A DNA stretch of 64,000 nucleotides from Trichosphaerium sp. ATCC 40318. Its lineage: Eukaryota; Protista; Tubulinea. The notes below the pieces were generated by a model. That model had not been told where the DNA came from. It saw only the letters and a program-made list of their open reading frames with translations, and did no database searches. The stretch covers positions 74,568-138,567 of the forward strand of contig JALMLS010000474.1 in assembly GCA_038496445.1 (NCBI GenBank), read 5' to 3'. Positions 22,319 to 61,357 of this stretch are shown here, one piece after another (the first letter of the stretch is position 1; every line of letters starts with the position of its first letter). The position numbers and the translations under genes are program-made.

Positions 22319-24084
22319 CTAAAGAAGACCCTTTCTCTTTGCTTTTGTAACTTTGATACGTTCCACCAAGTTGAATCCAAGTTCTTTCAACACTTCTTGA
22401 TAGATTTCATTCGCTTGAATGTCAAGTTCATTCATCAAGGATCCAAATTCTTGTGCTCGCTCACTTGAGATACCCAACCCTGTCAATACTGACACCCAAT
22501 CAATTTCATTGTTTTGAAGCGGTATTGGTGCCATTGGAGAAACTGAAGTGATGGTTGATTTGGTATCACGCTGAGTGAATGTTGGCTACATTACAGTTAG
22601 TGTAAAGTAAATGCAAAAATGAAATAACATACTGTGTCAACAGATATGTTGGGTTTCTCAATCCATGACTGGTTGGGTAATACTACCTTTATATCGTGTG
22701 GTAATAGAATGGGGTTACTAGGTTCACCGCTAGGCTACAAACTCGTTAGGAAAGAATGTTAATATATTGTTTTTGACTGTACATTAGTGAACTTGTCTTG
22801 ACCTTGTTTTATTTCAAGGGCGTCTTTAATGATATCAATGTGCTCTTGAGCGTCTCCAAACTTGTTGTAGCCTTGATCAATCTTTGTGTATATTCCAGTA
22901 CCAACAATTGACAAGTAATTTCGTTTTTGGTCTTGTTTCAACTCTTTATGTAACTCTTCTAAAGTGTGGACTACCTAAACTAGCAGTTTGCATCGTATTG
23001 ACAACAAATGATTGATTACCTTTCTGTGGTTACTGAATGTCAATTTTTGTGGTGTTGATTTACCATGATCATTCTGTCCACCTGTGACCAACGTAAAGTC
23101 ATGAGATATTGCCAAGTAATGATATTGTTTAGTGGCAAACTCAAGATATTTTCCAGGTAATTTTAATGGTTTGTTTGATTTGAACAAATCAATCCATTTC
23201 CCTTTACCCCAACCAAACAAACAACCTTCATCATCAATCGCAAATGATGTATACATGCCAACATGGACAGATTTGATGTTATTGAGTCCTTTGATGATAC
23301 CCTGGCCATAATCGTCATCAATACCCAACCCAAGACACCCACGCCAGTTGTGTCCAAAAGAAAATACTTGTCCTGACTTGAGGAGAACAAGTACATGCCA
23401 ATCACCAATGGCAATATCAGTGGCATCATCAATACTTGGAACACGTGAAATTGTCTTTGATTTCAAGAATAATGATTTATATATCGCTTCATGGTCTGTT
23501 TGAAGCGAATTATATGTTGTTCCCCAAAGAAAGACATGACCTGTTGACGTCATTGCTCCACTTACATACGAGTTAGTTTGAATTTTTTGAACATTTTGAA
23601 GATTTGGAATAACCGCTGGTGATGAAACTTGCAAATTGTCGAATGAATGACCCAATCCTTGATTTAAGTTGTCTCCCCAAGAGTAGACATGACCTGAATG
23701 TGATAACGCCATACTCACACATAAGGCAGAGACTTTCGTGATATTGTTGAGATTTGGAACACGTGTTGGTGACGAAATAGGTGACGCAAAGTGACCCAGA
23801 CCCAATTCACCATTAAAATTATAACCCCATGCATACACAATACCGTTTGAATCAAGTGCAAGGCTATGAAGGCATCCAGCAGCAATACAGACGATATTTA
23901 TGAGTGATTTTATTGGTCTTGCGATAGAACTCTTTTTTTCGTCTGTGTTACCCAATTGGCGCTCATTGTTTCGTCCCCACGTGTAAACAAAGCCATCGTC
24001 TGCGATTACCATTGAATGGTTTAAACCAGTGGCCAAACGGTTAACATATTGTAAATTAGTATCTAAAGTCTGAGGTTCTGCCAT
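22319..24084 (-). CDS. RCC1 propeller - KFG linker - SAM-like protein, copy A
   Basis: Single ~1.06 kb exon with 7 RCC1 blades (GxxH..WGxNxxGxLG). Short exons follow with YNKFGDAQEHIDIIKDAL and DWVSVLTGLGIS..EVLKELGFNLVERIKV. Confidence 0.9.
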
Positions 24085-24546
24085 GATTCGCGTTTTAGGT
24101 CTTGACTGGACGAATACTGTTCCATTTTTGTCAATGACGAAAAAACACGGTCGTTTTTTTTTGGTCATCATAATTTTTGAATTCAGTAGAGTACTGAATG
24201 TTGCAAGTACAGTTTTACAAACTGTGAATTGTGTTGTTACGGTGGTAGAAGTGTTTACAGCTATGTGGCATGTTCAAGTGTTTTCTTGTCCACATCAAGA
24301 ATAGATATTTTGCCAAGAATTCTTGCTGTACCTTTCATTCGTGTTGTAGTAAGCTACGATATTGTCAGACAAATCCAATCGTCAATAGCCAAGCATTGAT
24401 TCACTTTTCTTACTTTCGTTGTGGGTTCTGATGCACTAATACCGCCCGTCCAAGCCAACTGAGCAACCATACGTTCCTTATATCTAACATAAATGAGGCT
24501 AGATTTTCAACAAGCACTTCATTTGTAACTTTTTTATTTGTATGAT

Positions 24547-26453
24547 TTACATGTTTTTATATTTGTACTCGAAAAAGTCTACACGTTCGCTTACAGTGAA
24601 CCCAAGTTTCTTCAAAATCTCACCTGAGATTTCGTTCATTTCAACACACAACCTATGTAATTTAGATCCAAGCTCATGCGCTCTTGGTTGATCAAACCCA
24701 GCTGATATCAATCTCTTAATCCATTTGGAGGTTTCAACATTTACTGTTTTTGTCTCAGGTAAGAATGGTGTTATCAAAGAGCGCTAGAATAAAATAGGAA
24801 TGAGCAAACTTAATCTATACTTGTATGTTTGAAAGGGTTGTACATTGGCGAGGTTGACGGACTTATTATCATTGTTCATCCAAGACAGTGTTGATACAAG
24901 TTCACTTGCGTTAATTGAAGCATTTTTTCGACAAGATTCAGTGTCGTTCGACAAAGACTCATCAACCTTTGTATGATGGTAAGTGAGTTTACCCAAAAAC
25001 AGAAATTAGTACCTGTGTGTTGTCATTACTGTTTTCTGTTGATTGTTCTTCTTTTCTGGCTCGTATGTAGTCACAAGCATTTGCTAGTATATCAAGGTCT
25101 TGTTTGGTTTCTCCAAACCTCTTAGGCACATCTCTTGTACCATCTCGTGATGTGAACATCTCTTCAGGTGGACGTACTTTAAGTGACAACTTATCAAATG
25201 GAGGCCGACGTTCTAGTGCCTAAACACGTGTTTAGTTCTAAGATGAGCATAAAATATGACTGCAGTACATTCAACTGTTGAGATGTTCCTTGGTCTTCAG
25301 ATGTGCCTTCTCTCATTACCAAAGTGTGATCGGCTTGTATTGCAATAGAACAATGTTGTTTAGTGGCGAACTCAAGATATTTTCCAGATAATTTTAAAGG
25401 TTTGTTTGATGAGAACTTCTCCATCCATTCACCTTCGCCCCAGCCATATAAATGTCCTTGAATATTAATAGCATAAGATGCGTAGGGACTAGCATTGACA
25501 GAGACAATGTTATTGAGTCCTTTGATGATACCCTTTCCAAGCTTTGTATCAACACCTAACCCAAGTCGCCCTCGATTGTTGTCTCCAAAGGAAAACACTT
25601 GTCCTGACTTGAGGAGAACAAGCACGTGATAATGTCCGATGCCAATATCAGTAGCATCCGAGATGTTTTCTACACGTGATATTGTATTTGTTTTCAAGAA
25701 TAAGGCATTGTTTATATCATTGTAGCGAGTCTTTCCCCAAAGAAAGACATGACCTGATTTTGTTATTGCTCCACAAACGAAAGAGTTCGTGCTGATTTTT
25801 ACAACGTTTTGTAGACTCTGAATACGTTTTGGTGTATGAACTCTTGTTTCTTTGTAAGAGTGAGCTAATCTCCCGTTAAAGTTGTATCCCCAAGAGTAGA
25901 CATGACCTGATGTTGATAACGCCATACTCACATATAAGGCTGCGACTTGAGTGATATGATTGAGCTTTAGTACTTGCGTCGGTGTTGAGATAGGTGACTT
26001 GAAATGGCCTAGACCTAATTCTCCATCTTCGTTGCGTCCCCACGAATAAACAATACCACTTGCAGCAGTAGCAAGGCTATGGTTTTGACCAGCTGCAATG
26101 CATACGATATTAACAAGTGAATTTATTGGATGAAGTATGGGCGTTATCCTTTGTTCGATATTTCCTAGTGATACTCAACAAGGATAATCTTTTGATAAAC
26201 TATTTCTAAAAACGCCCACAAAAACTTTTTAGGAAGGCGCACGTGATTTTTTTTTTTTGGATGAATTTTTATTCGCAAATATAAGTTATTAATAATACTC
26301 ACTGTTGTTATCTTCGTTGGTTTGGTATCGCCACACGTGAACTGAGCTGTTATTTGTGATAGCCATTAAATGCCCTCCAGCAGCTAAATGCCTACCACTA
26401 GCCAAAAGGTTACCGTAGTTTACATTAGGGTTCTTAAAATGCAGTTCAGCCAT
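24547..26453 (-). CDS. RCC1 propeller - linker - SAM-like protein, divergent copy B
   Basis: Start MAELHFKNPNVNY, intron in first blade, RCC1 blades, PKRFGETKQDLDILANA linker and KWIKRLISAGF..EILKKLGFTVSER tail. Confidence 0.82.
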
Positions 26454-26852
26454 AAATGCTGCGTTGTGAGGTAAATACTGCGGAAATTGTAAAACTTAAG
26501 AATGAACTTAACCTCAGCTAACGGTCATTGAACAAGAGTGAGACCCTTGCAAAGCAGGCTCTGTACACTACTTCCTAAGTTAGCGCTAAACAGTTTCCAA
26601 CTAAATCACTTCGCAACCTCAGTTTACTACCTTAGAAGAAATTATGTTTTTAGCCGTTAGCCCTCATCAGCAACTGCTTTGATATTGTTAAGAACCTCGC
26701 TATGTATGTTGTGATAGCTTTATTAGTTCATTGACTTGTACTCAGCGTTGGTCAATTCAAAGATACAACCAAATACTATTCTGACAAGTTATTTGAATTT
26801 TTTTTTGTGCACGTGAGCATTATCAAAAAAAATACATACAAACAACACATCA

Positions 26853-35500: not shown

Positions 35501-35622
35501 AACTGATGATGTGAACTTGAAAAAAACTGTTCATCAAAAACAAAAAAAATAAATTTGTTGAGAATGAAGCTACAGAGGAGTATTATGATTGTTTTATTAG
35601 ATATAGTTTTAGCCCTATTGTA

Positions 35623-42600: not shown

Positions 42601-45048
42601 GAAGTCATATTTGTTGTCTTGGAAACTAAAAAGATGTAGGAACAAACAATGTTCTTGTAACCGAGAATGTTGCATATGATACTAACGGTCATTGTTTCTA
42701 TATTGAGGATGGCGTAGAAGAGGATAATACAATATCATACAACCTGGGCGCTTTCATTAGACTCATTTCTCCACCAGTTGCGTTTTTTATCCTGTTTTTT
42801 TTTTTTTGAAACAAAAAGCCACTTTATGCCTTACCAACTATGTCTATGACTGCGTTATTCATTAATTTTACAACCCATAATAAAGTCGATTGTTAGCACT
42901 AAAGTAGTTCAAACAACAAGATATTTTAAGTTTTTAGAACGAAGTGCTAACATCTTTTTTAAGACAGCTCAAAATGGAAACTGGCTTCTTGGAACAGGTC
43001 AAGCTGGTACAACAGTTGATGGTCATTCAAACCTCATACAACCTGCCGATATTGCCGCGTCTGCTTTTTACTTCTCTAATGCATGGAATACAATCATTGG
43101 TAACAGCGCTAGCGGAGGTTTCGCTGGATTCACGTTTCCAAACTTCGAAAAACCGATTGGAAATCACAGAAATGTTAACGAAAGACCTATGCGAAGACCA
43201 CTCAAAGAGTTTGATGGTAATGAATGTCATTCATCAGGTACATTCTGGGAGAATGTAGCATGTGTCTATGTCGGAGGGGACTTGAGTTATGTTGGGAATA
43301 GCAATACTTTGAGGTATTTTACAGGAAGAAAAGGAAGAGTTTCACGTGATGGAGTCACAAATAATCAAGTATCTATGATATTCAGAAATACACGCATTTG
43401 GGCTTCTAATATGGGTATTAATCATTGGGGAATGAGGCCAGAAGTGATCAACTATGAAGCGTATGACATTCGACGAGGTACAACTTTTTTTTTGATTTGC
43501 AAGTTTTTTTTTGTTGACGCTTTCTGTTAGCTGGTATGCTCTTTGGTGAAGGTCTCATTAATCACGCTATCATTCAACAATACACTGATAATATTAATGT
43601 TGCCGTGTATTATAAAAACAGCGATACAACTGAAGGGTTTCGGTACTATGATACATCAAGCCAAGCAATACTATTAGATTGTACAATGGTGAATTACAAC
43701 AAACACCCAAGGCACCTTAGTATATTTGACATTTTATCTTACCTTTGATTCCATAGAAACCCTTCTATAACTGGATACGCCATTGACTCTCTAACGCACA
43801 GCGACTTTTTCACGCCTCAGGTTCGAACTCTTTAAGATGACAGTTGGTTTTATTTAACTTTCTTTGTGTTTTAGGGGATTAGTGCGCAGTCTAATATGAA
43901 GTTTATCAACTCTCCTGTACGCTTTAGATTTCACCCACGTATTACAGTCGAGAAGAACAATAACGCTTGGCGATATTGGAATCTTGTGGATTGGGATGGA
44001 ACTATCATTGGTAACAACAAAGTACGTATAAATTGAAAATTGTTTTCTTGTTGTTATTACTTTACTTCTCTGTCCGTTTCTTATTGTGTATGGTAGAGAA
44101 CTATATGGGGTTCAGCGTCTGGATACACTAATGATTGGTGGAACTTCGGTGCAAACTGTAACTTACACTCAACTTTGAACGTGTGGTATTGTGAAGACCC
44201 AAATAATGTTAGAAGAGTTGGATGGCTTAATGTTGAATCACCTGGTATAATGGACAATGATTTACCTGCTGTAGATCAGAACGGACAAGCTGGTAATAGA
44301 AAACAATAGTTCTAATGTAATGAGAATTGGTTAACGTCTATTTACAGGTACAACATATCACATCGGAAAAGCGTCTTTGTTTGGCTCTAAAATCAATTCA
44401 AAGAGAAGTGTTATCATCACACCAAACACAGGTACAATACTTACCATACTATGGATTTTAGTCTGCTCTAACTTTGCAAGGCGTTTGTGGACCTCTTGAG
44501 AAAAATATAGGATGGCATTTTTGGTATAAAGATGGTACACCAAAAAAGTTGATAATCGATGGTCGTATTTGGTATCGTTCTAATGAAGAAGGTCTTGTTA
44601 CTGGATTTCATTATCCAAGGTCATCAAGTTTTACTGTTTATTGTAAAGAGAATGGTAACACAGCACGATTCAATGGACGTAGGGTAAACTCTGCAAGTCA
44701 GGTACCAGTTAAACAACAAAAACTAGCGTTTGTGAAAACTGAACAATTTTGTGTTTGCAGGTTTGGTCTTCTCCTGATTCTCTTGCTTGGCATTGGGATA
44801 GCAATGCTGGTCTTCTGTTATTTAAATTCAGAGATAAAACAAGTTACCCTAATGCAAGCTCTGTTTTCAGGAAGGGAACTGTAGAATTGTTGAGGTAAGG
44901 TTAATTCAAACCACAAGAAAAAAGAAAAAAAACTCATCTAAACAAATTCTTTAGGCAGTCAGGCTTGTGGAAGTGTTACATTGAAGCGACATGTCCAGGA
45001 TCTTCAAATAGATGTTCACCTGTTACTGAAAGGGTACCTGGATTTTGA
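39679..45048 (+). CDS. Secreted CBM4/9-like + G8 domain + beta-helix protein (fibrocystin-L/CEMIP-like architecture)
   Basis: NLLSNG|GFEDG..FYVDD (CBM). G8 and following motifs IIVRGQLRIGSPTC, PTWTRLA, LLSRKI, GGH, GQLNHIARYPLH and HCFYIEDGVEEDN. Confidence 0.85.
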
Positions 45049-45708
45049 GTATGTCACGGACAAACTTAGGTAGAAAGCACAATATCACACCAAAAAAAAA
45101 AAAGTCACATTTATTAGATGTAGAACCAATTAATTTAAAAGTTCTCTTGCTTGGTAGACAACTTTATTATTTCACTTTTTATTGAACCGTAGTGTACTGT
45201 TTATGTTTAGATTTACGTGCGAAAATAACTATTAAAACACGTGGCATAGCGTCTTGGACTTTGTACCTTTTCAAGCCCAAACCTGTCTAATGTTGAGTCA
45301 CCCTGTCTGACGACCGCGTCGTTTTCAGAAAAAAAAAAGGCAACAACAAAAAACGTGACATACAGATTAGGCCAATCAACAATATAACGCCAAGAATACA
45401 TCCAATAGTAATTAAAAAAAAAGTCATCATGTGCCAAAAAGGACGAAATCGCTTGAGCTGATAAAGAAGTTACATTTTGCATTCCACTTGTGAGCTCAAT
45501 TGTAGCGACTTGTGAATGTGACTCCCAGTCGAAAGATAATTAAAAGAAACCTTCAAGAATAGCCATAGTTGCCTCCAACACCCCTTCACTACTTAATAAG
45601 CACAAATACGCAGTGTACACAAGTGGAACTTGTTGAGATGTGATCGACATGAATCAGCAGAAATGAGAATAAACACGTTTTTTTTGTAAACTACTATTTA
45701 TTATTGAT

Positions 45709-47751
45709 TTAACAATGGTCTTTTTTATACTTGATAACTTTTGCACGCTCAATTGCTGTAAAATCAAACACTTTCATTATTTCTCCTTTTAACTCTTGTA
45801 TCTCAATACATGCTTCATCCAACATTGATCCAAGTGTTTGAGCTCTTGATCTCTCAATCCCTGCCAATATCAAGATATTCACCCATTCAACTTTCCCTCT
45901 CAACGGTTGTTCTGGTACAACTGGAGCTGATGCTGAAGGCTGCAATAAAAGTTAGGTGATGTATCGCTCCTGAGAGAAAGAGTCGTACTTTGCCAATGTC
46001 TACTGTTTCAGGTACAACTGGTATTGATACATCTCTCTTATCCATATTAATAGATTCAATCCTGTTCTTCCAGGACTGTTGCGAAACAAGGTCATCTACA
46101 TCAACGGAGGGTTGAGAAGGGTTCTTTATGGATGAATCGCCATTGAAGTGCGAAGAGGTAGACTTGGCTCCAATTGAATCGGAAGAAGCATCCTTAACAT
46201 TGACGTAAATAAATATGTGTTAAATGAAATATCTTGGTTGTACGTTGCCAAGGTTGATCGTTTCAAACTTATCTTGAAGCCATGATTGTCTTGATACAAG
46301 ATCATCAGCATCGATTAAAGGTGGATGTTGATTTGATTCATTGGTGGGTGGATTGTAGTTGATTGAATCAATAGAGGCTTCTTGTCCTTAAAGTATAAAA
46401 GAGTTACAAAACATAAGAATAGTGGAATGAGCACTTACTTTGCTGTTTGGATTGAATGAGATGACGAGCATTTTCGAGAATCTGAAGATCTTGTTCTGTT
46501 TGTCCAAATTTCTGAGGTACATCTCGAATGCCCTTTTTTGACGTGAACATCTCTTCGGATGGATGTACTTTGATCGATGACTTGTTGATTGGCTGTTCAT
46601 CCAATTGTTGAGTGTCGATTGTATCTTTGTTTGTTTGCTAATGACTTGTCAAATAGACAGAAAGATGAATGAGATTACAAAGTACCTTTTGGTGATTGTT
46701 GAATGTCAACTTTTGTGGTGTTGATTGACCATAATCATTATTTCCACCTGTGACCAACTGAAAGTCATGAGATATTGCCAAGTAATGAAATTGTTTATTG
46801 GCAAACTCAAGATATTTTCCAGGTAATTTTAATGGTTTGTTTGATTTGAACGAATCAATCCATTTCCCTTGACCCCAACCAAACAAACAACCTTCATCAT
46901 CAATCGCAAATGATGTATAGTAACCAGCATGTACAGATTTGATGTTATTGAGTCCTTTGATGATACCCTGGCCATACTCGTCATCAATACCCAACCCAAG
47001 ACACCCATTGTAGTTGTATCCAAAAGAAAATACTTGTCCTGACTTGAGGAGAACAAGTACATGACAATAACCAATGGCAATATCAGTGGCATCATCAATA
47101 CTTGGAACACGTGAAATTGTCTTTGGATTCAAGAATAATGATTTATCTCTTGCTTCATCTTTTGTTGTTTCCCAGAAATTTAGTTGTTCCCCAAAGAAAG
47201 ACATGACCTGTTGACGTCATTGCTCCACTTACATACGAGTTATTTTGAATTTTTTGAACATTTTGAAGATTTGGAATAACCGCTGGTGATGAAACTTTCG
47301 AATTGTCGAATGAATGACCCAATCCTTGATATGAGTTGTCTCCCCAAGAGTAGACATGACCTGATTTTGATAACGCCATACTCACTTCATAGGCAGAGAC
47401 TTTCGTGATATTGTTGAGATTTGGAACACGTGTTGGTGACGAAACAGGTGACGCAAAGTGACCCAGACCCAATTCACCATCTGAATTACAGCCCCATGCA
47501 TACACAATACCGTTTGAATCAACTGCAAGGCTATGATTCCATCCAGCAGCAATACAGACGATATTTATGACTGATTTTATTGGTCTTGCGATAGAACTCT
47601 TTCTTTCGTCTGTGTTACCCAATTGGTGGTGATTGTTTTGTCCCCACGTGTAAACAAAGCCATCGTCTGCGATTACCATTGAATGGTTTAAACCAGTGGC
47701 CAAACGGTTAACATATTGTAAATTACCCGACGAAGATTGCGGCTCTGCCAT
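45709..47751 (-). CDS. RCC1 propeller - linker - SAM-like protein, copy C (1-nt frameshift near 47162)
   Basis: ORFs 47155-47751 and 46638-47204 join. B-type linker PQKFGQTEQDLQILENA. SAM-like tail 45709-45945. Confidence 0.88.
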
Positions 47752-48247
47752 TAAAACGTTAGGTTACGTGACGTGCTCAATATTCGTTGGCTTTTGAACT
47801 ACTAAGCTTGACGCCATTTCTTATGGTAGGTTTTAAACCTGCCGCAGATGAGTTACTACATTACAATAAGGGGTAGCATTGATACTCTTAGAATTCTAAA
47901 ACCGAATCGCTTCAACCCTTTTTACGTTATGTACTTCATTGTCTAATAGCGTTAGAGGATATCAAAGCGACATAAAAACATAGGTACATAGATGTTGGTT
48001 TAAACCACCTCACTAGATACTCGTACCTTCAACAGGCTCAACAGCGATAATTTTAGCGTTCGTTGGAACTAAATAAACATCAATTATGGTACGTGGGCGT
48101 TTGTAAGGCTAATTACCAAGTAAACACGTGAAAACGCCTGTTCCTGCGCCTATTTAAACGATTGTCTTTGTCTTGGCAAGTGCCAAGTACTTTTGAGTGC
48201 TACATCCACAAAAAGAACGCGAAACTCAACTGCTTTGCATCTAACAA

Positions 48248-49190
48248 AATGAACCTACCCACGTGAAGATTGTAAAGCTAAACACGAGCAATTTTATAAT
48301 GCACAGATTGAAACTGTTTTTTTTTTTTTGTTTTTTTTTTATTCGACGAGTATTTTCTTTTCTCACAGCCCTTTAGGAGCGTGGTAACTCAATCATGGTT
48401 ATTTGCCTAGATTCTAGTGATCCAAAAGACTGTGTTGTTGCTGGTTTGAAGGCAGGTGCTAAGACTGGCGGATTTGAAACTAACTCAAAGGGGTAACAAG
48501 GTTGTAAAAAGGGTAAGCATATCTTTTTTTTTTCTCATTTTGATCTTTACTGACGATTTTGTTTTACTCTGTAGATATAACGTAATTCAAGGTGATGGTA
48601 TCAACTATGCAATTGTCACAAAAATCTTGAAGGTTGTTGTTGCTGATGGCCTTCTCTGTCCAATGTGTACGTTACAAAGTTGCTTGGAGTTTAAGTTTCT
48701 TTGTATCTTATCTTTTGTTGATAGGTCAGTTTCAGTATGGGTCGTGGACTCCTAATGAAGGTTAACCATGATACCATGCCATTCGCTACAAAATTGTGCT
48801 ACATTCACTATGCCAATGGAGATGAGAGAAAGGTCATGAAATGCCCAAAAACAGATTCTGGAAAAATCAGCTTCACAGGTATTCGTAAGGTTATCTGTAA
48901 CGATAAGGGCGCTCCAATAATCTACCCTTGCGGTGCAGATGAAAAAGTAGACCCAGAGAAGAACCTCCTCAAAGTTGTCTATGATTGTGTACGTGCTCTT
49001 GTGTGTTGTAGTGGTTTTTTTTTTCTCAGTTACTGACTTCTTTTTTAGGGTCGAAGCCATTTTCCATGCTTTTTCAACTCTTTATTGTACCTTGTGCTCA
49101 TTGCAGTACGCTTTGGAAGCAGTGGATAGCATAGGTACACTGATACTGATGCGTCTAAATCTATAATATCGAGCTGAATCTTGGGTGGGA
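48248..49190 (+). CDS. Small multi-exon hypothetical protein
   Basis: Short exons separated by T-rich GT..AG introns. No recognised domain. Confidence 0.4.
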
Positions 49191-49239
49191 AGTGTAATAG
49201 GTGACAAGTATCTCGTTTTACTGCGATAGTATGAAGCAT
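49045..49239 (-). pseudogene. Possible truncated N-terminus of an F-box-MORN paralog
   Basis: HLLHFPPKIQLDIIDLD...ELKKHGKW resembles HLFDLPVELHLDIIDLD...DLNKHGKW at 880-1021. Confidence 0.55.
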
Positions 49240-50740
49240 CCTAAATAAAGTACAATAAATTACTTCGGATAGTAGAAAATGAAAATATCAGCATAAGTCA
49301 CTTGATATCACGTGACGTATGTATGGGATATCAAGTGTAAGCGATACTGTAGTGCTGGGGTTTTTGGAGAAATAGCGTAATTAACGGAGCACTACGATGT
49401 TGAGAAAACTGTAAACTACTAAAAATGAAAAAATGAAAAAAAATTGAAGTCAATAGCAATAGTTGTTTATTGGTGATATTGTATGGCGCAATGTTTACAA
49501 ATAGAGTTGGTCGTGGTCCAGTACCAACTAAGCCAGCTATAAAAATCTGTAGCTGGTTAACTGACGGCTAAGAAACTCAGCAACAAAATCTGAAATCAGC
49601 TAAACCGTTTAAAAATGTGTGATTTTGTTGATGTTGTACCATGGCACCACATGCTTTTTTTACGTTTTATATGCTCTCAATGGCTTTGACTTCGTTAGTG
49701 TTTGATACATAAGTCCAAAGCCTAGTGTTTTACCCAATATTCTCAAAGGTAAATGTGAATGTCACTGTCCCTAGTTAACATTTCTTATCACAAGTCAATT
49801 GACTGAGTGTAGAGCTTTTTACTAGGTAGTCGATAAGTATATCTTGCATGTAAAATGCGTTTAGAACACACTGGGTAAACGTAGAGTGTACAATAATTGC
49901 ACCTGATCCGAGAACTTTCTCGGCACATTTTTTGGCTTGAAAAAACTGTAAAACATACTTTCCGTGAACCACTACCACTTGTTTACTCTTGCAGGTCACT
50001 ACAGTACTAAATAGGTTGTAATGGATTTAATAAACGTATTTGAGCGCTGTGGATACGACTGACTGGAATAAACAAGAAAAGTTCTTCTTATTGTTCTTTT
50101 CTACGCGTATAATCGCGTGTACTATACTTTGGTGAGTATTTGTGTAAAGATAAGGTAGACCAGCAAGCCCTGTTTTGAAACTTTGGTACCACCCTTTCTA
50201 GATACAGAGAAATGTATTTCCGTTGCCTTAGAAACAGGCGGTCGCGTTCTGCCATATTTTATGTTGAAATCCGTAGTTGAACCCAGGAGCTTTGTAACAT
50301 AATGTAAGATACTGTATGTATAGTAAGGCACCATTGAAAAGTGATTTTGGCTTTCAGAAACTGTTTACCATTCGAATGAAAATTATCAAAAACAAGCACA
50401 TTCGTTTTTCAGTTTTTTACGAATTTACAGCCATGTGATAGTTTTTGGTTACCAGTATGTTTGTAGTATGTTTTACATAACTATGTCTACTTGTAGCCGT
50501 AATATAAAGTTTCTAGCGTACATTTGTGAACCACACTGACGGGTTTTTTTTAGTTTTCAATCTGCTCAGCAAAAAGTTCTCTATGTGACCCTCAATGTGT
50601 TAATATAATGTCATTGTTCTGTTCAAAACAAGCTAGTATTTATTGTAAGACATCTAAACTATTACAAAACCAATTGTTAATATTCGATTGTTTTTGGTGT
50701 ATTCATCATTGAGGAGGCTTAAGATATGCGCTTCATCGAT

Positions 50741-52491
50741 TTATAGAGCATTTTTGCGCTTTGCTTTGATGACCTTGATACGTTCAATTGGATTGAATTC
50801 AAGCTCTTCTAATACATCTGAGGTGATGTCTCCAGGTTTGATACCTGATTCATTCATTAACGATCCAAGCTCTTGTGCTCTTGCACTTGAAATACCCAAC
50901 CTCGACAATGTTGACTTCCAATCATATTTGGGAGTAGCGATTGATTGATTCTCTTGAGGTGGACAGAACTCCGACTAAACGAACAAAATTAAATGTGAAG
51001 AAAATAAAATTAAAACGAGACACCTTTGTGTGAGCAACTGAAACATGAGGCTTGTCATTCCATGATTGTTCAGATACAATTGAGGTGTCTACATCAAGTG
51101 GCAAGCGAGGATTGTCAACCTAAAATACCATGTGAGATAGGTATCGCTTATTTTCTGATACTTACATTGTTGATGTATTCATCTCGATTTTGGTGTATTT
51201 TAAAGGCTTCAAGGGCATCTTGAATGATATCAAGGTGTTCAGGATCATCTCCAAACTTGGTGTAATCACGATTGGGCTCAACCACAGCTTTTGACAAGTA
51301 CTTATCTTTTCGGTCTTCTTTTAACTCTGCATTCATTGCTTTCACAGCATCATTGTTTTTATCTTTTGCGATTACTTTATTGGCTGGTTTAAAGTGCTTG
51401 TAGATTGTGAGATAAAAAGAAAGACAAATAAGATTTCAAAGTACCTTTTCATAATTGGTGAATGTTAACTTTTGTGGTGTTGATTCACCAAAATGATTAT
51501 CTCCACCTGTGACCAACTGAAAGTCATGAGATATTGCCAAGGAATGAAATCGTTTATTGGCAAACTCAAGATATTTTCCAGGTAATTTTAATGGTTTGTT
51601 TGATGAGAACGAATCAATCCATTTCCCTTGACCCCAACCAAACAAACAACCTTCATCATCAATTGCAAATGATGTCCACACACCAGCATGTACAGATTTG
51701 ATGTTATTGAGTCCTTTGATGATACCCTGGCCATACTTGTCATCAATACCCAACCCAAGACACCCATTGTAGTTGTGTCCAAAAGAAAATACTTGTCCTG
51801 ACTTGAGGAGAACAAGTACATGCCAATCACCAATGGCAATATCAGTGGCATCATCAATACTTGGAACACGTGAAATTGTCTTTGGATTCAAGAATAATGA
51901 TTTATCTCTTGCTTTAATATCTGTTGTTCCCCAAAGAAAGACATGACCTGTTGACGTCATTGCTCCACTTACACACCAATTAGTTTGAATTTTTTGAACA
52001 TTTTGAAGATTTGGAATAACCGCTGGTGATGAAACTTGAAAATTGTCGAATGAATGACCCAATCCTTGATAGAAGTTGTCTCCCCAAGAGTAGACATGAC
52101 CTGATTTTGATAATGCCATACTCACACGATAGGCAGAGACTTTCGTGATATTGTTGAGATTTGGAACACGTGTTGGTGACGAAACAGGTGACGCAAAGTC
52201 ACCCAGACCCAATTCACCATCTGAATTACATCCCCATGCATACACAATACCGTTTGAATCAACTGCAAGGCTATGATTCCGTCCAGCAGCAATACAGACG
52301 ATATTTATGACTGATTTTATTGGTCTTGCGATAGAACTCTTTCTTTCGTCTGTGTTACCCAATTGGCGCTCATTGTTTTGTCCCCACGTGTAAACAAAGC
52401 CATCGTCTGCGATTACCATTGAATGGTGGCAACCAGTGGCCAAACGGTTAACATATTGTAAATTAACCGACCAAGTGCGAGGTTCTGCCAT
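50741..52491 (-). CDS. RCC1 propeller - KFG linker - SAM-like protein, copy D
   Basis: Intact propeller exon, YTKFGDDPEHLDIIQDAL, and YDWKSTLSRLGISSARAQELGSLMNE..ERIKVIKAK. Confidence 0.92.
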
Positions 52492-52842
52492 GCTTGTATT
52501 GCGTTGAAATACATCAATTCAAAGCAAGTCCGTTTTGAAACAGAGGACTAGTGGTTCAATTATAGGCTCAGCTCTAAATGACTGTAGACCTGAAAACAAG
52601 TCGGATATAAACCGGCTCATTAGCTCTAAAATTGTTTCACAACAAAAAGAAAGTTTGGCTTGTTCAGCTGCACCACTTGCATGTCTGAAGTTCTACATAT
52701 TCTAAACAGGTTTACACATAGTTTATGCACTAATACAAGCGGTCAAAAGCCACCATTAAGATGTTTAGACGGTATAAAATGGACCAAAAAAAAGTCAGGG
52801 ACCGGCTTTTTTTTTTTCTCGCATGACTATTCCATTCTTTAT

Positions 52843-55011: not shown

Positions 55012-55050
55012 TTTATGACGTTTTTTTTACTCTTACTCTAACATACAGCT

Positions 55051-58000
55051 TATTCTGGAATACTTGACAACTCTAAAACAAGAATATGAAACACCTACGC
55101 AATGCGCGCATTGTCGTTTAGGTCTGAACGAAAAGCGTTCGTTAGACATGTAATCAAGTTTTTTTTATGGTGATACGTGTTTTAACGTACTACAGGTAGA
55201 GAAGCGGCTAAGTATAACAAAACACAACGATTGGTATAGCGTTTCATGGCAAGATATCGTAAAACTAGGCGGGGGGGCTTTAAATAGGTAAATTAGATCG
55301 TTTTACGAGTGTTATTCAACGTTTATTGTAAAATATTACAAATGGCACTTACATTATGCGTAGCACGTACGAAGCTATTAACCGATGTATACCCAAATGT
55401 TAAATGGAACAAGTGGCTTTTCAGTACGTTTGATTAAATACGCCTGTATACAGCTCCGTAGACTATTTAATGATTAACCAACGCTTAAAACGATGCGTTA
55501 GTTAAAAAAGCATAGCAGCTAACAATTTACGTTAGACGCTGTGCCATTGGACTTTTGGGAATCACAGGATAATAAAATAGCGTTTATGAATCATGTACGA
55601 CACTTACACATGCTATAAAAACCCAAAACTTTTGTGTCATTCCAGAAAATTTTTCGGTTCAAAACGGACTTTTAGGTTAACTCGTCACGTGTTGTTTACT
55701 GACATGAATGTTTTATAGGTTGCTGAAACGCTAGAATACTGTTCAATGGACAGATTTTATGAACTTTCAATAGAGAAAGTTAAAAAACTAGGTGGTACAC
55801 AGCTGTTAAGGTGAGTCGTATATTACATAATAAGAAAATTTTAGGATACGCTTTTTATCTGAAACTGTGACTTATAACTCAATTAGACAGTACAGATTCT
55901 ACCTTGTATCATGTATGGAGGATATATTTCGCTCTTATAAATGGTTTCCATGGCGTTTTGGTACTACTGTTGTTAGTGAGATACTTCAAGAGTTCTAATA
56001 TATTTTTTTGTTGTAGTTCATCATAGCGTTCCTAAGAGTTATTGGTTAGACCTTGATAATGTCCTGGATTGTTTTATTGAGGTACACACATTCAAGCCTT
56101 CTTAATTGTTTAGCCAATCTTCAGTGTTATGAGAAGTTTGTGGGATGAGTAAAGCGAACATCCCTTTATGAAGAAAAAACCAACCTTGAAACTTTGTCAT
56201 TTTTACGTTTTTGCTTGACTATACTGACTTGTTGTAGGTTGAGCGTCTGCTTGATATAAGAAACGTAAGGGATTGGTATAACTGTAATAATTTTGATATA
56301 ACAAAATTGGGTTGTGCAAGTGTTATAACGTGCGCAAATAGTTCCAAGTTTTTTTTTACTGGTTACTCTTGTCGGTTTCATCTATTTTTATATGTACTTA
56401 TTAATATTTCTTAGCCAGTTTGGTTCTTCTTTACACTTGATTGTGAAGTATATGTACCCAGATCACGAATGGGTTCCTTGGAAGTTCAGTAAGGACCTAT
56501 TTTATTTTTTCTTCAAAAAAAAAAACTGTTCTTCATGACGTCTCATTAAAACTCCTTTTAGAGCAAGTGCCAAGAAATTTTTGGAATGATATTAACCACC
56601 ACCGCGCTTTCTTACATTCAGTAAGTCAATCACGTGTTACACATTTTGTTTGAAGCCAAAAGAAACGAGAAATTCATCTTTCATTAAATGACATAAAATC
56701 GCTTTATCTACCCACGTGTTTTGAGTTCTAATACTTTATCAGGCTGCTGAATATCTTAATGTGAAGTATCTAGATGATTGGTATGATATTACTGTAAATG
56801 ATATGAGACGTGCTGGGGGTTGTATTGTAGGGTACAGTTAAAATTAGTTAAATTTTTTTGGGTTTTTTTTTCCGTTTTTGCAAGTATTTTTGTGTTATGT
56901 CTCACAATGATATTCCAGGGCAGCTAACCGGAAGCTACCACATATTTTACAATCCTTGTATCCTGATTATAAATGGAACTTGTCTAGGTTTAGGATTAGA
57001 ACTCATGGTATGTCAAAAAAAAACGAAACAATCAAAAAAAACCACTTCTTGATTCCCAAAAGTTTACCTATCCCGAAACAAAGCCAATATCTCTTTGAAA
57101 ACGAATTAACACTGTTGGCTTGTGTAGGGATTTTTTACTGTCCTTTTCGGTTGCAAGTTACGTTATCAAAACTGCAGCTTGTCCTTTACAATATGTTGTT
57201 TTTTTTTCTTTTCTTTTGTTCGTTTTGAACAAATTTTCTTGACTCTATGACAAGTTCAAAAAAAGCTTGTCACGTGTGCATTCTTTGTTTCTGATATTTT
57301 AAGCATGTACTTTTCAAGACTGACTTCTTTCCTTCAAAGATACACCGAGGAATTACTGGAGGGATACAGCCAATGTCAAGAAGTTTTTAGAAAGTATTGC
57401 TGAGTCTCTTGAAGTGACGTCTCCAGCAGATTGGTATAGGGTTTCTCATACCAATTTGAAGAAATATGGAGGTTCTGGGCTAATAGCATACTGGCCGCAG
57501 ATCTTACATAAAGTATATCCATTACACACTTGGAAAGATGTTGAGTTTTCTACACGAGACAGAAGAACAACACAAGGGTATTTTTCCAAATCCGCTTGCA
57601 CTTGGCCTATTGGACTTAATTTATTATGAACTAAAGCCTGTGTGCTATATTTTTTTAGAAGTTTAGAGGAACTTGCTCTTTATTGTGAGGGAGCGAGGCT
57701 TTTGAAGGTTTTGGTCTTTTTTTTTTGTTCGAAAAAAAAAGCATATTTTTTCTTTCTTTTAATGGCTGTTACTTGCGTTGGTACTGACATTTTTTCAAAG
57801 GATAATGGCACAAACGCTTAAAAAGATATTTCCAAACATGGATATCATAGAAGAATACTACCTTGGACTTCGCGGAGACGCTGATAGAGCAGTTACGTTG
57901 GATGTATTTGTACCAGATGTCAATATCGCTTTGGAGTACATGGGCGAACAGCACTATATTGAATTTATTGGTGCGTACGGTCACGTACACCTACAAGAAG

Positions 58001-58591
58001 CTAGAGATGCTGAAAAAGTTCACAAGTGTAAAAAAATAGGTACAAACCAAGCTTCAAGTTCGTTTCTTGTTTTTTTTTTTTTTCACACTCTCATCTTCTT
58101 TAATTTCAACGCTGGTATTGACTTGAATGACTTTATTTTTCAGGAGTTTCACTTATTCCTATTCCATTTTGGTGGGATACAGGCGATGTAGATAGCTTAA
58201 TTTCAACAATTTTGTATTATAGGTAACAAACACGCTTTTCTTATTATTTTCATTTTCTTTTCAGTTTTTTTTTTCTTTTTGCTTTTCAAAAACCGGTTAT
58301 TTCTCCCTTTCTCTTCCTGCTTACAGGATTTTTCTAGACCAGATATTAAACTACCAAAACCTGATGTTAGTCCGTTATTAGAAATACCGGAAAAATCAAA
58401 GAAGGAGATTTTTGGAAGTACGTTGTAGGAAGAGCAAACCGACTTTCGTCAACTATCCAGTTTGCTTTTTTTTTTCTTTGACATGACATTTGTTGGGGAT
58501 TCACTGCTCACTTCTCTGTTTAGTTGTAGCAATATCAAAGCTCATGAGTGCTAATTCATTTGCCTCTTTTGAAGACAGTGTACATATGTGA
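55051..58591 (+). CDS. Multi-exon Trp-rich repeat protein with C-terminal PD-(D/E)XK/RAP-like domain (first exon probably ~52680-52771, upstream of the transposon)
   Basis: About 5 repeats of W.F..VP..FW....N...F...AE.L.....DWY.V....GG. C-terminus LDVFVPDVNIALEYMGEQHY..RDAEKVHKCKKIG..IPFWW. Confidence 0.75.
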
Positions 58592-59315
58592 TAAAAAGTA
58601 TCAGCTTGATTTGATTGTCAAGCTATCATTTATTTGTGGTCAATCAAGGTTAACTTGGATAATTGATAGTGCTTAGAACAGTGTTAGGAACTAGAGCTGT
58701 GCTTCATTTTTCCTGTTTACTCGCTCATTGCGCTCAATAGTTTGATATTAGGCCTAGTGATAGAGTCCTATTAGCTTCTTAATAGCTAAGCCAATAAGAC
58801 GAAAATAATAAACTCAATAAGGCTGTAATGAAAATCGTGTTTTTAGGAAGGAGTTGGTAAACAAAGAACAAAACAGGATTTTTTACTGCAAAGGATTTTT
58901 AGTGTTTTTATGAGCTGGTAGCAGCTCATACATACACCGAATATTGTCTTTTGGAAATAGCTTATTGTATTTATTTGTATCATCACTGGGTGCAATAAAG
59001 CATTGTTCATGCCTCTGCCTAGCTGTGCACCTCCGCGTGATCACTTTAGAAAGCGTGTATATGCCTTTAACTGTTACTGTGGCCATGAACCAGTGCTCAT
59101 GTAACAGCAAACAGACTGTTTGAAACATACCAAGGAACACATATGGTGGTTGGAAGCTATCCAAGGGCAATAGCTTCTATAGGTGGAACCAAATAATAGT
59201 AAAACATATTATGCTTCTAACTGAGTTTTATTTGTTCAACACTACAATTTTTGTTCATTTATTTTTCCCTTCGTTCTATTCATGTTAAACGGTTTTTATC
59301 AAATGGTGCTGAGTT

Positions 59316-61357
59316 TTAAAGAGTGTTGTTGTTCTTTGCTTTGATGATTTTAATACGTTCCCTCAAGCTGAATCCAAGATCTATCAGCACATCTTTATCA
59401 ATTTCATCAATTGTTGCGCCTGCATCGTTCATCAATGATCCAAGTTCTTGAGCTCTTTGATTTGCGATACCCAACTTCATCAATATTGACTTCCAATCAG
59501 TTTCAACATTTAGAACTGATTGATTCTCATGTGGTACACCGAAATGTGACTAAACAAACGCCATTAATAACAATTAAGTGTTACAACAAGAAGAAAGAAG
59601 CAAAGTCGTGGAAGTGTACCTTATTCTTTATGTCAACAGAAACATTTGGTTTATTGAGCCATGATTGTCGACTTAGGTTGTCAGATGAAGAGGAGCTGCT
59701 TCTAAAATCGTCATCGGGTGCAGGACTCTGATAAGACGATTTCTTTGGTGATGGAGAGTTGCTGGCTATGTCATGCTGTGGCATACTATTTTCCTCTAAT
59801 TCATAATACTAGGAACCAATTAGTAACATTCATCTCACATGTGCGGTATTTTATAAAGCAAATGGTACCTCATTGTTGGCTTCAACAGATACATTTGGTT
59901 TATTGCTCCAGGATTGTTGATGTAACACTTGGTTGTTTGATAATGTTTCATCAACTATCAGACTATACTTGCGTTGGTTACAATCCTACAAATGTCAGTA
60001 AGTTGTTCACCTTATAGTGAGACATACAGAGTTATTTTGTTGCTGTATGTTCAAGCCTTCAAGTGCATCTTGAATCATGTCAAGGTGTTCAGTAGTATCT
60101 CCAAACTTGGTGTAGTCATGACTGGGATCAATCACAGCTTTTGACAAGTACTTATCTTTTCGGTCTTCTTTTAACTCTGCATTCATTGCTTTCACAGCAT
60201 CATCGTTTTTATCTTTTATTGTTACTTTGTTGGCTGGTTTAAAGTGCTTGTAGATTGTCAGACAAAAAGAAGACAAATAAGATTTCAAAGTACCTTTTCA
60301 TAATTGGTGAATGTTAACTTTTGTCGTGTTGATTGACCACAATGATTATCTCCACCTGTGACCAACTTAAAGTCACGAGATATTGCCAAGTAATGTTCTT
60401 CTTTATTGGCAAACTCAAGATATTTTCCAGGAAATTTTAATGGTTTGTTTGATTTGAACGAATCAATCCATTCCCCAATACCCCAACCAAACAAACAACC
60501 TTCATCATCAATCGCAAATGATGTATACAAACCAGCATGTACAGATTTGATGTTATTGAGTCCTTTGATGATACCCTGGCCATACTTGTGATCAATACCC
60601 AACCCAAGACACCCATACCAGTTGTATCCAAAAGAAAATACTTGTCCTGACTTGAGGAGAACAAGTACATGACAAAGACCAATGGCAATATCAGTGGCAT
60701 CATCAATACTTGGAACACGTGAAATTGTCTTTGGATTCAAGAATAATGATTTATCTCTTGCTTCATAATCTCTTTGAAACACATGGTTTGTTGTTCCCCA
60801 AAGAAAGACATGACCTGTTGACGTCATTGCTCCACTTACATAGTGATTAGTTTGAATTTTTTGAACATTTTGAAGATTTGGAATAACCGCTGGTGATGAA
60901 ACTTCAAATTGTTGAATGAATGACCCAATCCTTGATATTCGTTGTATCCCCAAGAGTAGACATGACCTGATTTTGATAATGCCATACTCACATAATAGGC
61001 AGAGACTTTCGTGATATTGTTGAGATTTGGAACACGTGTTGGTGACGAAACAGGTGACGCAAAGTCACCCAGACCCAATGACCCATATGAATTACTCCCC
61101 CATGCATACACAATACCGTTTGAATCAACTGCAAGGCTATGAAACCGTCCAGCAGCAATACAGACGATATTTATGAGTGATTTTATTGGTCTTGCGATAG
61201 AACTCTTTTCTTCGTCTGTGTTACCCAATTGGCGGCTATTGTTTCGTCCCCACGTGTAAACAAAGCCATCGTCTGCGATTACCATTGAATGTTCGTAACC
61301 AGTGGCCAAACGATTAACATATTGTAAATTAACCGACGAAGATTGTGGCTCTGCCAT
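59316..61357 (-). CDS. RCC1 propeller - KFG linker - SAM-like protein, copy E (1-nt frameshift near 60907)
   Basis: ORFs 60836-61402 and 60285-60953 join. YTKFGDTTEHLDMIQDAL and DWKSILMKLGIANQRAQELGSLMND. Confidence 0.9.

What the first reader, a model, noticed from the sequence alone, without database searches (positions are those of the whole stretch)
23020..61357. Mosaic sharing of variable codons implies gene conversion or recombination between dispersed copies
Sharing patterns conflict along the gene. A=C at blade-1 LN (TTA AAC). A=D at ER (GAG CGC) and DW plus FGHN. C=D at CNSDGE and YNG. D=E at AAGR, LGDF, GDNH and the following intron. C=E at FGYN and xCH. A has a much more diverged C-terminus yet an almost identical propeller framework. 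Inference: concerted evolution homogenises the framework while shuffling variable patches.
Basis: partly seen in the sequence, partly recalled or inferred. Interest (0 to 1): 0.75.

Follow-up and report, generated by a model that had tools for sequence, protein, structure and literature searches.

The report
Gene conversion shuffles hypervariable RCC1 genes
An amoeba-like genome holds dozens of near-copies of a wheel-shaped (RCC1) protein gene, and these copies swap short stretches with one another, which keeps the scaffold uniform while re-dealing about 50 variable codons, much as immune-type receptor families do.

Summary
As evidence, though, they are at chance level. The three quartet patterns have 10, 7 and 9 sites with no clustering. 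Hypervariable (HV) codon matches per pair (14-26) fit random draws from the family pool (17.5 +/- 3).

- Non-HV sites give PHI p<=0.0005.
- Contiguous thirds of the exon fit each other's trees worse than 70 random site partitions do.
- 57% of silent-site pairs show four gametes, above the maximum (50%) of 500 no-recombination simulations.
- Upstream flanks and 3' tails are re-assorted across the exon.
- Silent divergence is about 3% in the propeller exon but 28-45% in the tail exon of the same genes.
- Contig C546 matches the window's C-D region at about 99.9% outside the genes but differs 4-6% inside the propellers. 57 of 63 non-HV differences in three such pairs are variants already present in other copies.

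This points to templated, patchy interlocus gene conversion. Not settled: no long reads were available, so an assembly artefact or allelic haplotigs are not fully excluded. The scan had already found this family on other DNA of the same genome.

The parts
23014..24084 (-). Copy A, propeller exon (intact; ORF 22975-24171). Its interior belongs to the close group G0. The first ~9 and last ~10 codons are L031/L027-like.
22322..23044 (-). Copy A, 3' end of the exon plus the tail (linker exons and SAM-like exon 22322-22585). This tail is of a different class (nearest L027/L033). The switch point lies about 1040 nt from the ATG, near window 23044.
25272..26453 (-). Copy B, a divergent paralog (about 59% aa to D). 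It plays no part in the mosaic.
46680..47751 (-). Copy C, propeller exon. It is frameshifted by a 2-nt deletion near 47179, in the length-variable loop. Its counterpart on contig C546 is L010.
45712..46679 (-). Copy C, tail (linker of the B-like type; SAM-like exon 45712-45951). This tail class is shared with L010 and L017.
51445..52491 (-). Copy D, propeller exon (intact). It reads as a mosaic: L003-like for aa 2-75 (with the matching upstream flank), then L004-, L005-, L010- and L006-like segments.
51397..51444 (-). 48-nt GT..AG intron after D's propeller exon, seen as a joint in contigs of a public run.
50744..51396 (-). Copy D, tail (linker exons; SAM-like exon 50744-50974). This tail class is shared with L002, L012, L006, L011, L024 and L028.
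60288..61357 (-). Copy E, propeller exon. It is frameshifted by a 1-nt deletion near 60904, at an HV codon. It is L008-like for aa 2-191 (with the matching upstream flank), then C-like, then L012-like.
59352..60287 (-). Copy E, tail (SAM-like exon 59352-59549). This tail class is shared with L004, L008 and L009.
41737..52491 (.). Block colinear with contig C546:4920-15647. Outside the genes the mismatch rate is 0.1-0.2%. Inside the propellers of D and C it is 4-6%. Colinearity ends at D's start codon.
55012..61357 (.). Block colinear with contig C446:7539-13886. The flanks differ by mostly 0-2%; E's propeller differs by 7.9%. Colinearity ends at E's start codon. E's upstream (61358-64000) instead matches the upstream of L008/L009 on C104 at 98.5%.

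Best explanation
The copies belong to a family of at least 60 genes, of which 41 intact full-length propeller exons were aligned. Each gene encodes a seven-blade RCC1 propeller in one ~1.05-kb exon. After a 48-nt intron come linker exons and a small helical C-terminal domain with a SAM-like predicted fold.

Shown: in the 22 closest copies (G0, on 6 contigs) the propeller exon repeatedly exchanges sequence with other copies, in register.

Inferred mechanism: heteroduplex forms over the homologous exon. It is bounded by loss of homology about 10 nt upstream of the ATG and near the first intron. Mismatches are then repaired in patches. This would have two effects. Framework variants are spread or erased, so the scaffold stays about 97% identical while the tails and flanks of the same genes have diverged beyond alignment. 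And the roughly 50 variable codons (two loops per blade) are re-dealt among copies at a scale of one to a few codons, with occasional 100-700-nt tracts and crossovers that re-assort upstream flanks and tails.

Inferred: selection for diversity at the variable codons keeps many alleles per position, on a face that corresponds to the interaction face of UVR8.

Not settled: whether some partners are alleles (haplotigs) rather than paralogs, what the ligands are, and what the tail does.
For: (1) Non-HV sites: PHI 0.357 vs 0.467 +/- 0.029 for permuted site order, p<=0.0005, 65 sites, 22 copies.
(2) Run-length test in the style of GENECONV: 13 of 231 pairs at p<=0.01 (2.3 expected). Two tracts are globally significant: L005-L016, 247 nt, and L011-L016, 272 nt.
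(3) Trees from contiguous thirds of the exon, HV codons removed, conflict more than trees from 70 random partitions. All 42 copies: 201.8 vs 129.2 +/- 12.4. G0 only: 85.2 vs 63.7 +/- 8.0.
(4) Of 91 pairs among 14 informative strictly silent sites, 52 (57%) show four gametes. Tree-only simulation gives mean 28%, maximum 50% of 500.
(5) Upstream and tail classes form a four-gamete cycle: L006 (E-type upstream, D-type tail), E (E, E), L004 (L004-type upstream, E-type tail), L028 (L004-type upstream, D-type tail). Flanks of different classes cannot be aligned. Upstream identity is at the level of shuffled controls for 94% of G0 pairs, while propeller non-HV identity has a median of 0.971.
(6) The SAM-like exon among A, C, D and E has 34-61% aa identity, and 28-45% of conserved residues use different codons. 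Framework third positions in the propeller differ by about 3%.
(7) Copying-model painting beats permuted site order for A, D and E (each p<=0.005). The donors found agree with the flank classes.
(8) Between window and C546, 3 kb of intergenic DNA has 7 mismatches and 4 kb has 3. The two propellers have 56 and 42 per kb.
(9) Non-HV differences whose two states both occur in other copies: C vs L010 16/16, D vs L002 14/17, E vs L004 27/30. This indicates templated import, not new mutation.
(10) Silent bases next to HV codons are 3 times more diverse (0.077 vs about 0.025, p=0.0035). They are linked to the neighbouring allele: GGG goes with TCA at codon 93 in 10 of 11 cases.
Against: - Strictly synonymous and strict-framework subsets give no PHI signal on their own (14 and 35 sites, p=0.62 and 0.14), so that test has low power there.
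- HV codons show almost no linkage beyond 3 codons (r about 0.01). This requires very many or very patchy events, and recurrent mutation would mimic it.
- Third bases of HV codons are largely conserved position by position. Their silent-type transitions are only 2-2.6 times the framework rate. So new point mutation under positive selection probably also feeds the allele pool.
- The assembly was made from amplified DNA with Canu, Pilon and Redundans (PMC10521059, if this is that genome). No long reads could be laid, and two of the five copies carry frameshifts.
Confidence: 0.78

Rival explanations
1. There is no exchange. The copies are recent duplicates, and each variable codon has mutated independently under strong diversifying selection from a restricted residue alphabet (Y, F, W, C, R, N, D, E, H, S). 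Shared codons are then coincidences or convergences.
For: - HV sharing among A/C/D/E is at chance level.
- HV codons are nearly independent of each other.
- The third base is conserved per HV position, as expected for single-step changes from one ancestral codon.
- Silent-type change inside HV codons is only about 2 times the framework rate.
Against: - It cannot explain the signals at non-HV and silent sites.
- It cannot explain re-assorted flanks that do not align between classes.
- It cannot explain the more than 10-fold gap in silent divergence between two exons of one gene.
- It cannot explain silent and framework differences between 99.9%-identical duplicate blocks that are nearly all variants present in other copies.
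- It would need 23 of 52 HV codons replaced, 7 of them by multi-base changes, while the upstream flank changed 0.3%.
Confidence: 0.04
2. The mosaics are an assembly or polishing artefact. Contigs may be joined wrongly through the 1-kb repeat. Short-read polishing may copy variants between paralogs. Or redundant haplotigs are being counted as separate copies.
For: - Colinearity between C168 and the small contigs C546 and C446 stops exactly at propeller start codons.
- The published Trichosphaerium draft, whose size and GC match this genome, used amplified DNA, Canu, three Pilon rounds and Redundans.
- C and E carry 2-nt and 1-nt deletions.
- L041 and L042 are identical.
- Public runs gave only 50-340-nt contigs, so no molecule-level check was possible.
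Against: - D is not L003 (5') joined to L002 (3'). It differs from L003 by 9% upstream and at 27 HV codons, and from L002 at 46 HV bases spread over the whole exon. L002 is likewise not L012 joined to D.
- 41 copies keep intact ~350-codon frames with unique HV combinations.
- The mosaic grain (adjacent codons) is finer than any k-mer or read-switch artefact.
- Identical templates would be polished identically.
- A transposon present in C168 but absent in C446 shows that these are distinct molecules.
- Contigs from four other studies match C and D pieces at 98-100%.
Confidence: 0.08
3. Programmed or somatic diversification. The near-identical blocks (C168 vs C546, C168 vs C446) would be the same locus in different nuclei or cells of a multinucleate amoeba culture, altered by ongoing templated conversion that is targeted to the propeller exon.
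For: - The differences are confined to the genes in otherwise 99.9%-identical DNA.
- They are recycled family variants.
- Many frameshifted or truncated copies exist that could serve as donors.
Against: - The blocks also differ structurally: different upstream DNA at the start codon and a transposon insertion. That fits separate loci or haplotypes better.
- No data from single cells or over time are available.
- Germline conversion explains everything seen.
Confidence: 0.07

Closest known systems
Podospora anserina nwd/hnwd (het-e, het-d, het-r) WD40-repeat genes (PMC1805685, PMC2873952; fungal NLR survey PMC4986451)
   Same: Both are beta-propeller families with an almost invariant scaffold and a few hypervariable positions per blade on the interaction face. 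In both, concerted evolution by sequence exchange between loci is combined with diversifying selection, giving an inherited recognition-type repertoire.
   Different: - Here the fold is RCC1, not WD40.
- There is no NACHT/STAND or N-terminal effector domain; instead there is a C-terminal domain with a SAM-like fold.
- The blades within one gene are not alike at the DNA level (best 29 nt at about 80%). Exchange is therefore gene-to-gene in register, not repeat-unit shuffling.
- The host is an amoeba-like protist, not a fungus.
Interlocus gene conversion with diversifying selection in clustered receptor genes (MHC, KIR, plant NLR clusters); from general knowledge, not tested here
   Same: Short conversion tracts re-assort pre-existing polymorphisms among paralogs. 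The framework is homogenised while binding-site diversity is kept. Trees differ along the gene.
   Different: The grain here is finer (linkage is lost beyond about 3 codons). The converted unit is a single exon whose borders coincide with the loss of homology. The fold and the lineage are different.
Templated somatic diversification (chicken Ig gene conversion from pseudo-V donors, trypanosome VSG mosaics, lamprey VLR assembly); from general knowledge
   Same: Variants are copied from a family of donors in short patches. Defective copies are present that could act as donors.
   Different: Nothing here shows somatic timing, a single expressed acceptor, or a dedicated enzyme. At least 41 copies are intact.
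UVR8 / HERC2 RLD / RCC1 (solved RCC1-like propellers)
   Same: These are the best solved relatives (UVR8 E=2e-43, HERC2 1e-41, RCC1 4e-29). The HV doublet G-x-x-H-S aligns with the W-R of UVR8's G-W-R-H-T motif. From general knowledge, that motif lies on UVR8's dimer and partner-binding face.
   Different: Identity to any protein in the word-search database is at most 36%. Those proteins are single-copy and conserved, not a hypervariable multigene family.

Membership tests
RCC1-like repeat propeller (Pfam PF25390 RLD, PF00415, PF13540) | Profile matches above the curated cut-offs | tested here: met
   A and D score 231 bits against PF25390 (cut-off 150) and 117-122 bits against PF00415 (cut-off 21.7). 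The best PDB relatives are UVR8, HERC2 and RCC1.
RCC1-like repeat propeller (Pfam PF25390 RLD, PF00415, PF13540) | Seven blades of about 50 residues | tested here: met
   Seven HV doublets recur at residues 21/22, 71/72, 121/122, 172/173, 222/223, 271/272 and 314/315 of D. Each is followed about 17 residues later by a W-G-x-N-x-x-G-x-L-G-type loop. No 3-D model of the propeller was made here.
RCC1-like repeat propeller (Pfam PF25390 RLD, PF00415, PF13540) | Guanine-nucleotide exchange or another known RLD activity | not testable with these tools
   This needs biochemistry.
Multigene family under concerted evolution by interlocus gene conversion | The converted segment is much more alike between loci than the flanks and other exons of the same genes | tested here: met
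   Propeller non-HV identity has a median of 0.971, while upstream DNA cannot be aligned in 94% of G0 pairs. Silent divergence is about 3% in the propeller and 28-45% in the tail exon.
Multigene family under concerted evolution by interlocus gene conversion | Phylogenetic signal changes along the sequence more than in site-shuffled controls, and does so at sites not under diversifying selection | tested here: met
   PHI on non-HV sites p<=0.0005. Contiguous vs random partitions p<=0.014. Silent four-gamete failures 57% vs a simulated maximum of 50%. Strictly synonymous PHI alone has too little power.
Multigene family under concerted evolution by interlocus gene conversion | Differences between recent duplicates are pre-existing variants of other members (templated) | tested here: met
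   16/16, 14/17 and 27/30 non-HV differences have both states in other copies. The surrounding DNA is about 99.9% identical.
Multigene family under concerted evolution by interlocus gene conversion | The mosaics exist on single DNA molecules and are not an assembly product | not testable with these tools
   Only short contigs of public runs could be laid.
Fungal NWD/HNWD-type hypervariable WD40 NLR | Highly conserved internal repeats that shuffle as units | tested here: not met
   The blades of D share no DNA similarity beyond 29 nt at about 80%.
Fungal NWD/HNWD-type hypervariable WD40 NLR | NACHT/STAND nucleotide-binding domain with an N-terminal effector domain | tested here: not met
   The protein starts directly with the propeller. 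Pfam finds only RCC1 families in the propeller exon and nothing in the tail exon. The linker exons were not scanned separately.
Diversity-generating retroelement | Variation confined to positions that are adenine in a template repeat | tested here: not met
   The majority bases at strongly variable HV positions are G 25, T 23, A 27 and C 8. The variants are recycled between copies. A reverse transcriptase was not searched for.
SAM domain (for the C-terminal exon) | Five-helix SAM fold | tested here: inconclusive
   The AlphaFold model of D's last exon (pLDDT 81, four helices) best matches Sla1 SHD2, which I know as SAM-like, with TM 0.67/0.76 and rmsd 2.0. It also matches several SAM domains at TM 0.5-0.66. 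No Foldseek hit reaches E<=0.001. There is no Pfam match.

The most novel reading that the evidence does not exclude
The propeller exon is the target of an active, possibly somatic, templated diversification process in a multinucleate amoeba. The 99.9%-identical blocks that differ only inside the propellers would be snapshots of one locus after recent patchy conversion from the donor family. That would make this an unreported, RCC1-based counterpart of gene-conversion immune repertoires outside animals.
Probability: 0.08. Interest if true: 0.9.

Novelty: new variant of a known kind. Interest (0 to 1): 0.62.

Why it matters
Concerted evolution combined with diversifying selection is how several recognition repertoires stay diverse, for example fungal NWD/HET genes, plant NLRs and the MHC. 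This case puts the same logic on an RCC1 propeller in an amoeba-like protist. My paper searches found no report of a hypervariable RCC1 family.

It also offers an unusually clean natural experiment. Duplicate blocks 6-11 kb long are nearly identical except inside the genes, and the imported variants can be traced to other copies. With long reads and clonal lines, this would allow direct measurement of conversion rate, tract length and patchiness. It would also show whether diversification is germline or ongoing in culture.

What the proteins bind remains unknown.

Tried and rejected
- PHI on strictly synonymous or strict-framework sites had too few sites (14 and 35) and gave no signal.
- Raw AU tests between segment trees looked decisive, but random site partitions also give large delta-lnL (119-152). 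I therefore used the partition control.
- An ancient balanced-allele model (HV alleles far older than the scaffold) is not favoured. Silent-type change inside HV codons is only 2-2.6 times the framework rate.
- DGR-type adenine mutagenesis is rejected.
- Blade-to-blade shuffling within a gene is rejected.
- Simple chimeric-contig models for D and L002 are rejected by their sequences.
- The read-level check failed. One search found only runs kept as short contigs (shares 0.05-0.17), and no piece bridges more than about 126 nt of a propeller.
- The word search for relatives found nothing above 36% identity in the 193-614 aa range.
- The large representative-protein search was not used.
Full report
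WHAT IS THERE. The window is G000:C168:74568-138567, the end of a 138.6-kb contig of a 70.3-Mb, 642-contig genome. Size and GC (about 37%) fit the Trichosphaerium sp. draft: 70.87 Mb, 37.69% GC, 710 scaffolds, Canu on PacBio and Nanopore reads of amplified DNA, three Pilon rounds, Redundans (PMC10521059). I did not verify the organism's identity directly. That paper does not mention RCC1.

Five minus-strand genes encode RCC1-like propellers (PF25390 at 231 bits):
- A 23014-24084
- B 25272-26453 (divergent)
- C 46680-47751
- D 51439-52491
- E 60288-61357

Each propeller is a single ~1.05-kb exon. In D, a 48-nt GT..AG intron follows it, seen as a joint at 51397-51444 in contigs of a public run. 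Then come linker exons and a final exon for a ~60-residue helical domain. The predicted fold of that domain (pLDDT 81) is closest to Sla1 SHD2 and to SAM domains (TM 0.5-0.76). No hit is statistically firm and there is no Pfam match.

As assembled, C carries a 2-nt deletion near 47179 and E a 1-nt deletion near 60904.

The genome holds 103 matches to D. These include about 50 full-length open copies on many contigs. The nearest proteins in the word-search database are at most 36% identical.

THE OBSERVATION. I aligned 41 intact copies plus C and E by codon. Fifty-two codons are hypervariable (HV; entropy >=1.6 bits). They fall as a doublet (G-x-x-H/V-S) and a W-G-x-N-x-x-G-x-L-G-type loop in each of seven blades. 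A further 255 codons are framework. The doublet aligns with the W-R of UVR8's G-W-R-H-T motif. From general knowledge, that motif lies on UVR8's interaction face.

Among A/C/D/E, framework third positions differ at 7-13 of 255 sites, while 38-60 of 156 HV bases differ.

The conflict among these four copies is nonetheless what chance gives:
- The 26 quartet-informative sites split 10/7/9, with no clustering (p=0.13 and 0.37).
- HV matches per pair (14-26) fit independent draws from the pool of the other close copies (17.5 +/- 3.0). Only C-D is high.

Family-wide, identity at one HV codon says almost nothing about identity at another more than 3 codons away (r about 0.01; 0.10-0.14 at 1-3 codons). 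The table of patches reads like a combinatorial library.

IS THERE RECOMBINATION? I used tests that do not depend on HV codons. G0 denotes the 22 closest copies (>=91.5% nt identity to D), which lie on contigs C104, C168, C446, C546, C322 and C106.

(a) PHI. Non-HV informative sites in G0 are more compatible within 100 nt than after site-order permutation (0.357 vs 0.467 +/- 0.029, p<=0.0005). All sites and HV sites give the same result. Strict-framework and strictly synonymous subsets are too small.

(b) A run-length test in the style of GENECONV. Thirteen of 231 G0 pairs reach p<=0.01 (2.3 expected). Two tracts are globally significant, at 247 and 272 nt. With all 42 copies, nine pairs pass the global threshold, including tracts between distant members.

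(c) Trees. With HV codons removed, each third of the exon rejects the trees of the other thirds (delta-lnL 190-290, AU p<=3e-4). Random partitions also conflict, so I calibrated against them. For all 42 copies, contiguous thirds give 201.8 against 129.2 +/- 12.4 (maximum 158) over 70 random partitions. For G0 the figures are 85.2 against 63.7 +/- 8.0. 'One tree fits all blades' is rejected.

(d) Silent sites. Of 14 informative sites in residue-invariant non-HV codons of G0, several have alleles at 10:12 frequencies. Fifty-two of 91 site pairs (57%) show four gametes. A tree-only simulation with rate heterogeneity gives a mean of 28% and a maximum of 50% in 500 runs.

(e) Flanks. Upstream DNA (-260..-61) and tails (+201..+700) fall into discrete classes that cannot be aligned with one another, and the classes are re-assorted:
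- D shares its upstream class with L003 and L014, but its tail class with L002, L006, L011, L012, L024 and L028.
- L006 has E's upstream class and D's tail class.
- L004 and L028 share an upstream class but have E-type and D-type tails respectively.
Homology among most G0 copies begins about 10 nt before the ATG.

(f) Two clocks in one gene. The SAM-like exons of A, C, D and E are 34-61% identical in protein, and 28-45% of the conserved residues use different codons. The propeller framework of the same genes differs at about 3% of third positions. The propeller has therefore been homogenised, or replaced, long after the genes diverged.

(g) The window's own copies. A copying-model painting beats permuted site order for A, D and E (each p<=0.005), and its donors agree with the flank classes:
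- D is L003-like for aa 2-75, then L004-, L005-, L010- and L006-like.
- E is L008-like for aa 2-191, then C-like, then L012-like.
- A is G0-like from about aa 9 to 341. At both ends of the exon it is L031-like, and its tail is nearest L027/L033; all three lie outside G0. The switch lies about 1040 nt from the ATG.

THE CLEANEST EVIDENCE. Contig C546 (15.6 kb) is colinear with window 52491-41737. Outside the genes the two are almost identical: 7 mismatches in 3 kb and 3 in 4 kb. Another spliced gene lies in the first of these stretches. Inside the propellers of D (vs L002) and C (vs L010) there are 56 and 42 mismatches per kb. Contig C446 behaves the same way towards window 55012-61357: the flanks differ by mostly 0-2%, and E vs L004 by 7.9%.

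Both colinear blocks stop exactly at a propeller start codon. E's upstream DNA instead matches the upstream of L008 and L009 on C104 at 98.5%.

The differences inside the genes are not new mutations. For C vs L010, all 16 non-HV differences (8 of them silent) have both states present in other copies. For D vs L002 the count is 14 of 17, and for E vs L004 it is 27 of 30. L002 also carries a 100-nt patch of another class across the exon end and intron, within otherwise identical DNA.

Differences and identities interleave at the scale of single patches. That is the signature of templated, discontinuous conversion. I infer patchy repair of a heteroduplex that spans the exon.

Silent bases beside HV codons are 3 times more diverse than other silent sites (p=0.0035). 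They are linked to the neighbouring allele, as expected if short haplotypes are moved around.

WHAT CONVERSION DOES NOT EXPLAIN ALONE. Third bases of HV codons are largely fixed per position, and silent-type change within them is only 2-2.6 times the framework rate. The allele pool is therefore not ancient. New point changes at codon positions 1-2, kept by selection, probably feed it, and conversion then spreads and recombines them.

RIVALS.
- Pure convergence fails on points (d)-(g) and on the duplicate blocks.
- An assembly artefact cannot be fully excluded, because only 50-340-nt contigs of public runs could be laid. Several things argue against it. D and L002 are not simple chimeras of their flank partners. 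Forty-one copies keep intact frames. The grain of the mosaic is finer than a read or k-mer switch. A 2.19-kb transposon present in C168 but absent in C446 shows separate molecules.
- Some partners may be alleles (haplotigs) rather than paralogs. That changes who exchanges with whom, not the fact of exchange. The five copies in the window lie on one contig and so are paralogs.
- Somatic, programmed conversion is not excluded but has no positive support.

COMPARISON WITH KNOWN SYSTEMS. The closest known system is the Podospora nwd/hnwd WD40 family (PMC1805685, PMC2873952). This family is not a member of it: the fold is RCC1, there is no NACHT domain, and the blades within a gene are not similar at the DNA level. 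DGR-type mutagenesis is excluded. Paper searches found no report of a hypervariable RCC1 family.

PRIOR NOTES OF THIS SCAN. Earlier notes had already described this family on other DNA of the same genome, and one had suggested copying of short stretches. I treated these as leads and tested the claim independently here.

Noticed in passing
window 52825-55011: A 2.19-kb element with ~37-nt terminal inverted repeats. At least 4 copies at 99% identity occur in the genome (C10, C103, C313, C168). It is absent from the otherwise colinear contig C446, so it looks like a recently active DNA transposon inserted upstream of copy D. Its ORFs (53141-53584, 53594-54064) have no Pfam match.
   Followed up: partly
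G000:C313:26763-26798: A lone 36-nt copy of that element's terminal repeat lies directly beside a truncated propeller copy (C313:26799-27734).
   Followed up: no
window ~47179 and ~60904: Copy C has a 2-nt deletion in the length-variable loop after blade 4. Copy E has a 1-nt deletion at an HV codon. Both shift the frame. They are either pseudogenes or uncorrected assembly indels.
   Followed up: partly
window 47844-48474 (+): A plus-strand gene between C and D has a 288-nt GT..AG intron (joint 48087 to 48376), seen in contigs of two public runs. It lies in the stretch where window and C546 are almost identical.
   Followed up: no
L041 (G000:C171:133390-134439) and L042 (G000:C226:75267-76316): Two propeller copies on different contigs are 100% identical. 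This is either assembly redundancy or a very recent duplication.
   Followed up: no
L036 (G000:C40:353250-354299) and L038 (G000:C168:8018-9067): These copies share an identical run of 784 nt (3' part). Their differences, 8 HV codons and 9 non-HV codons, all lie within the first ~130 codons. The flanks differ by 0.3-1.8%. This is another likely conversion patch. In the same region (alignment columns 320-440) both match the close group.
   Followed up: partly
codons 87 and 92 of the propeller (Gly before HV codons 88 and 93), all copies: The silent third base of these glycine codons is itself highly variable (heterozygosity 0.47-0.64). It is tied to the neighbouring HV allele: GGG goes with TCA in 10 of 11 cases.
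   Followed up: yes
window 9342-9464 (+): A 40-residue fragment of the propeller N-terminus (83% to D) lies on the other strand. An identical-scoring fragment occurs at C313:3115-3237. Another reader noted an RCC1-to-MORN chimera at this place.
   Followed up: no
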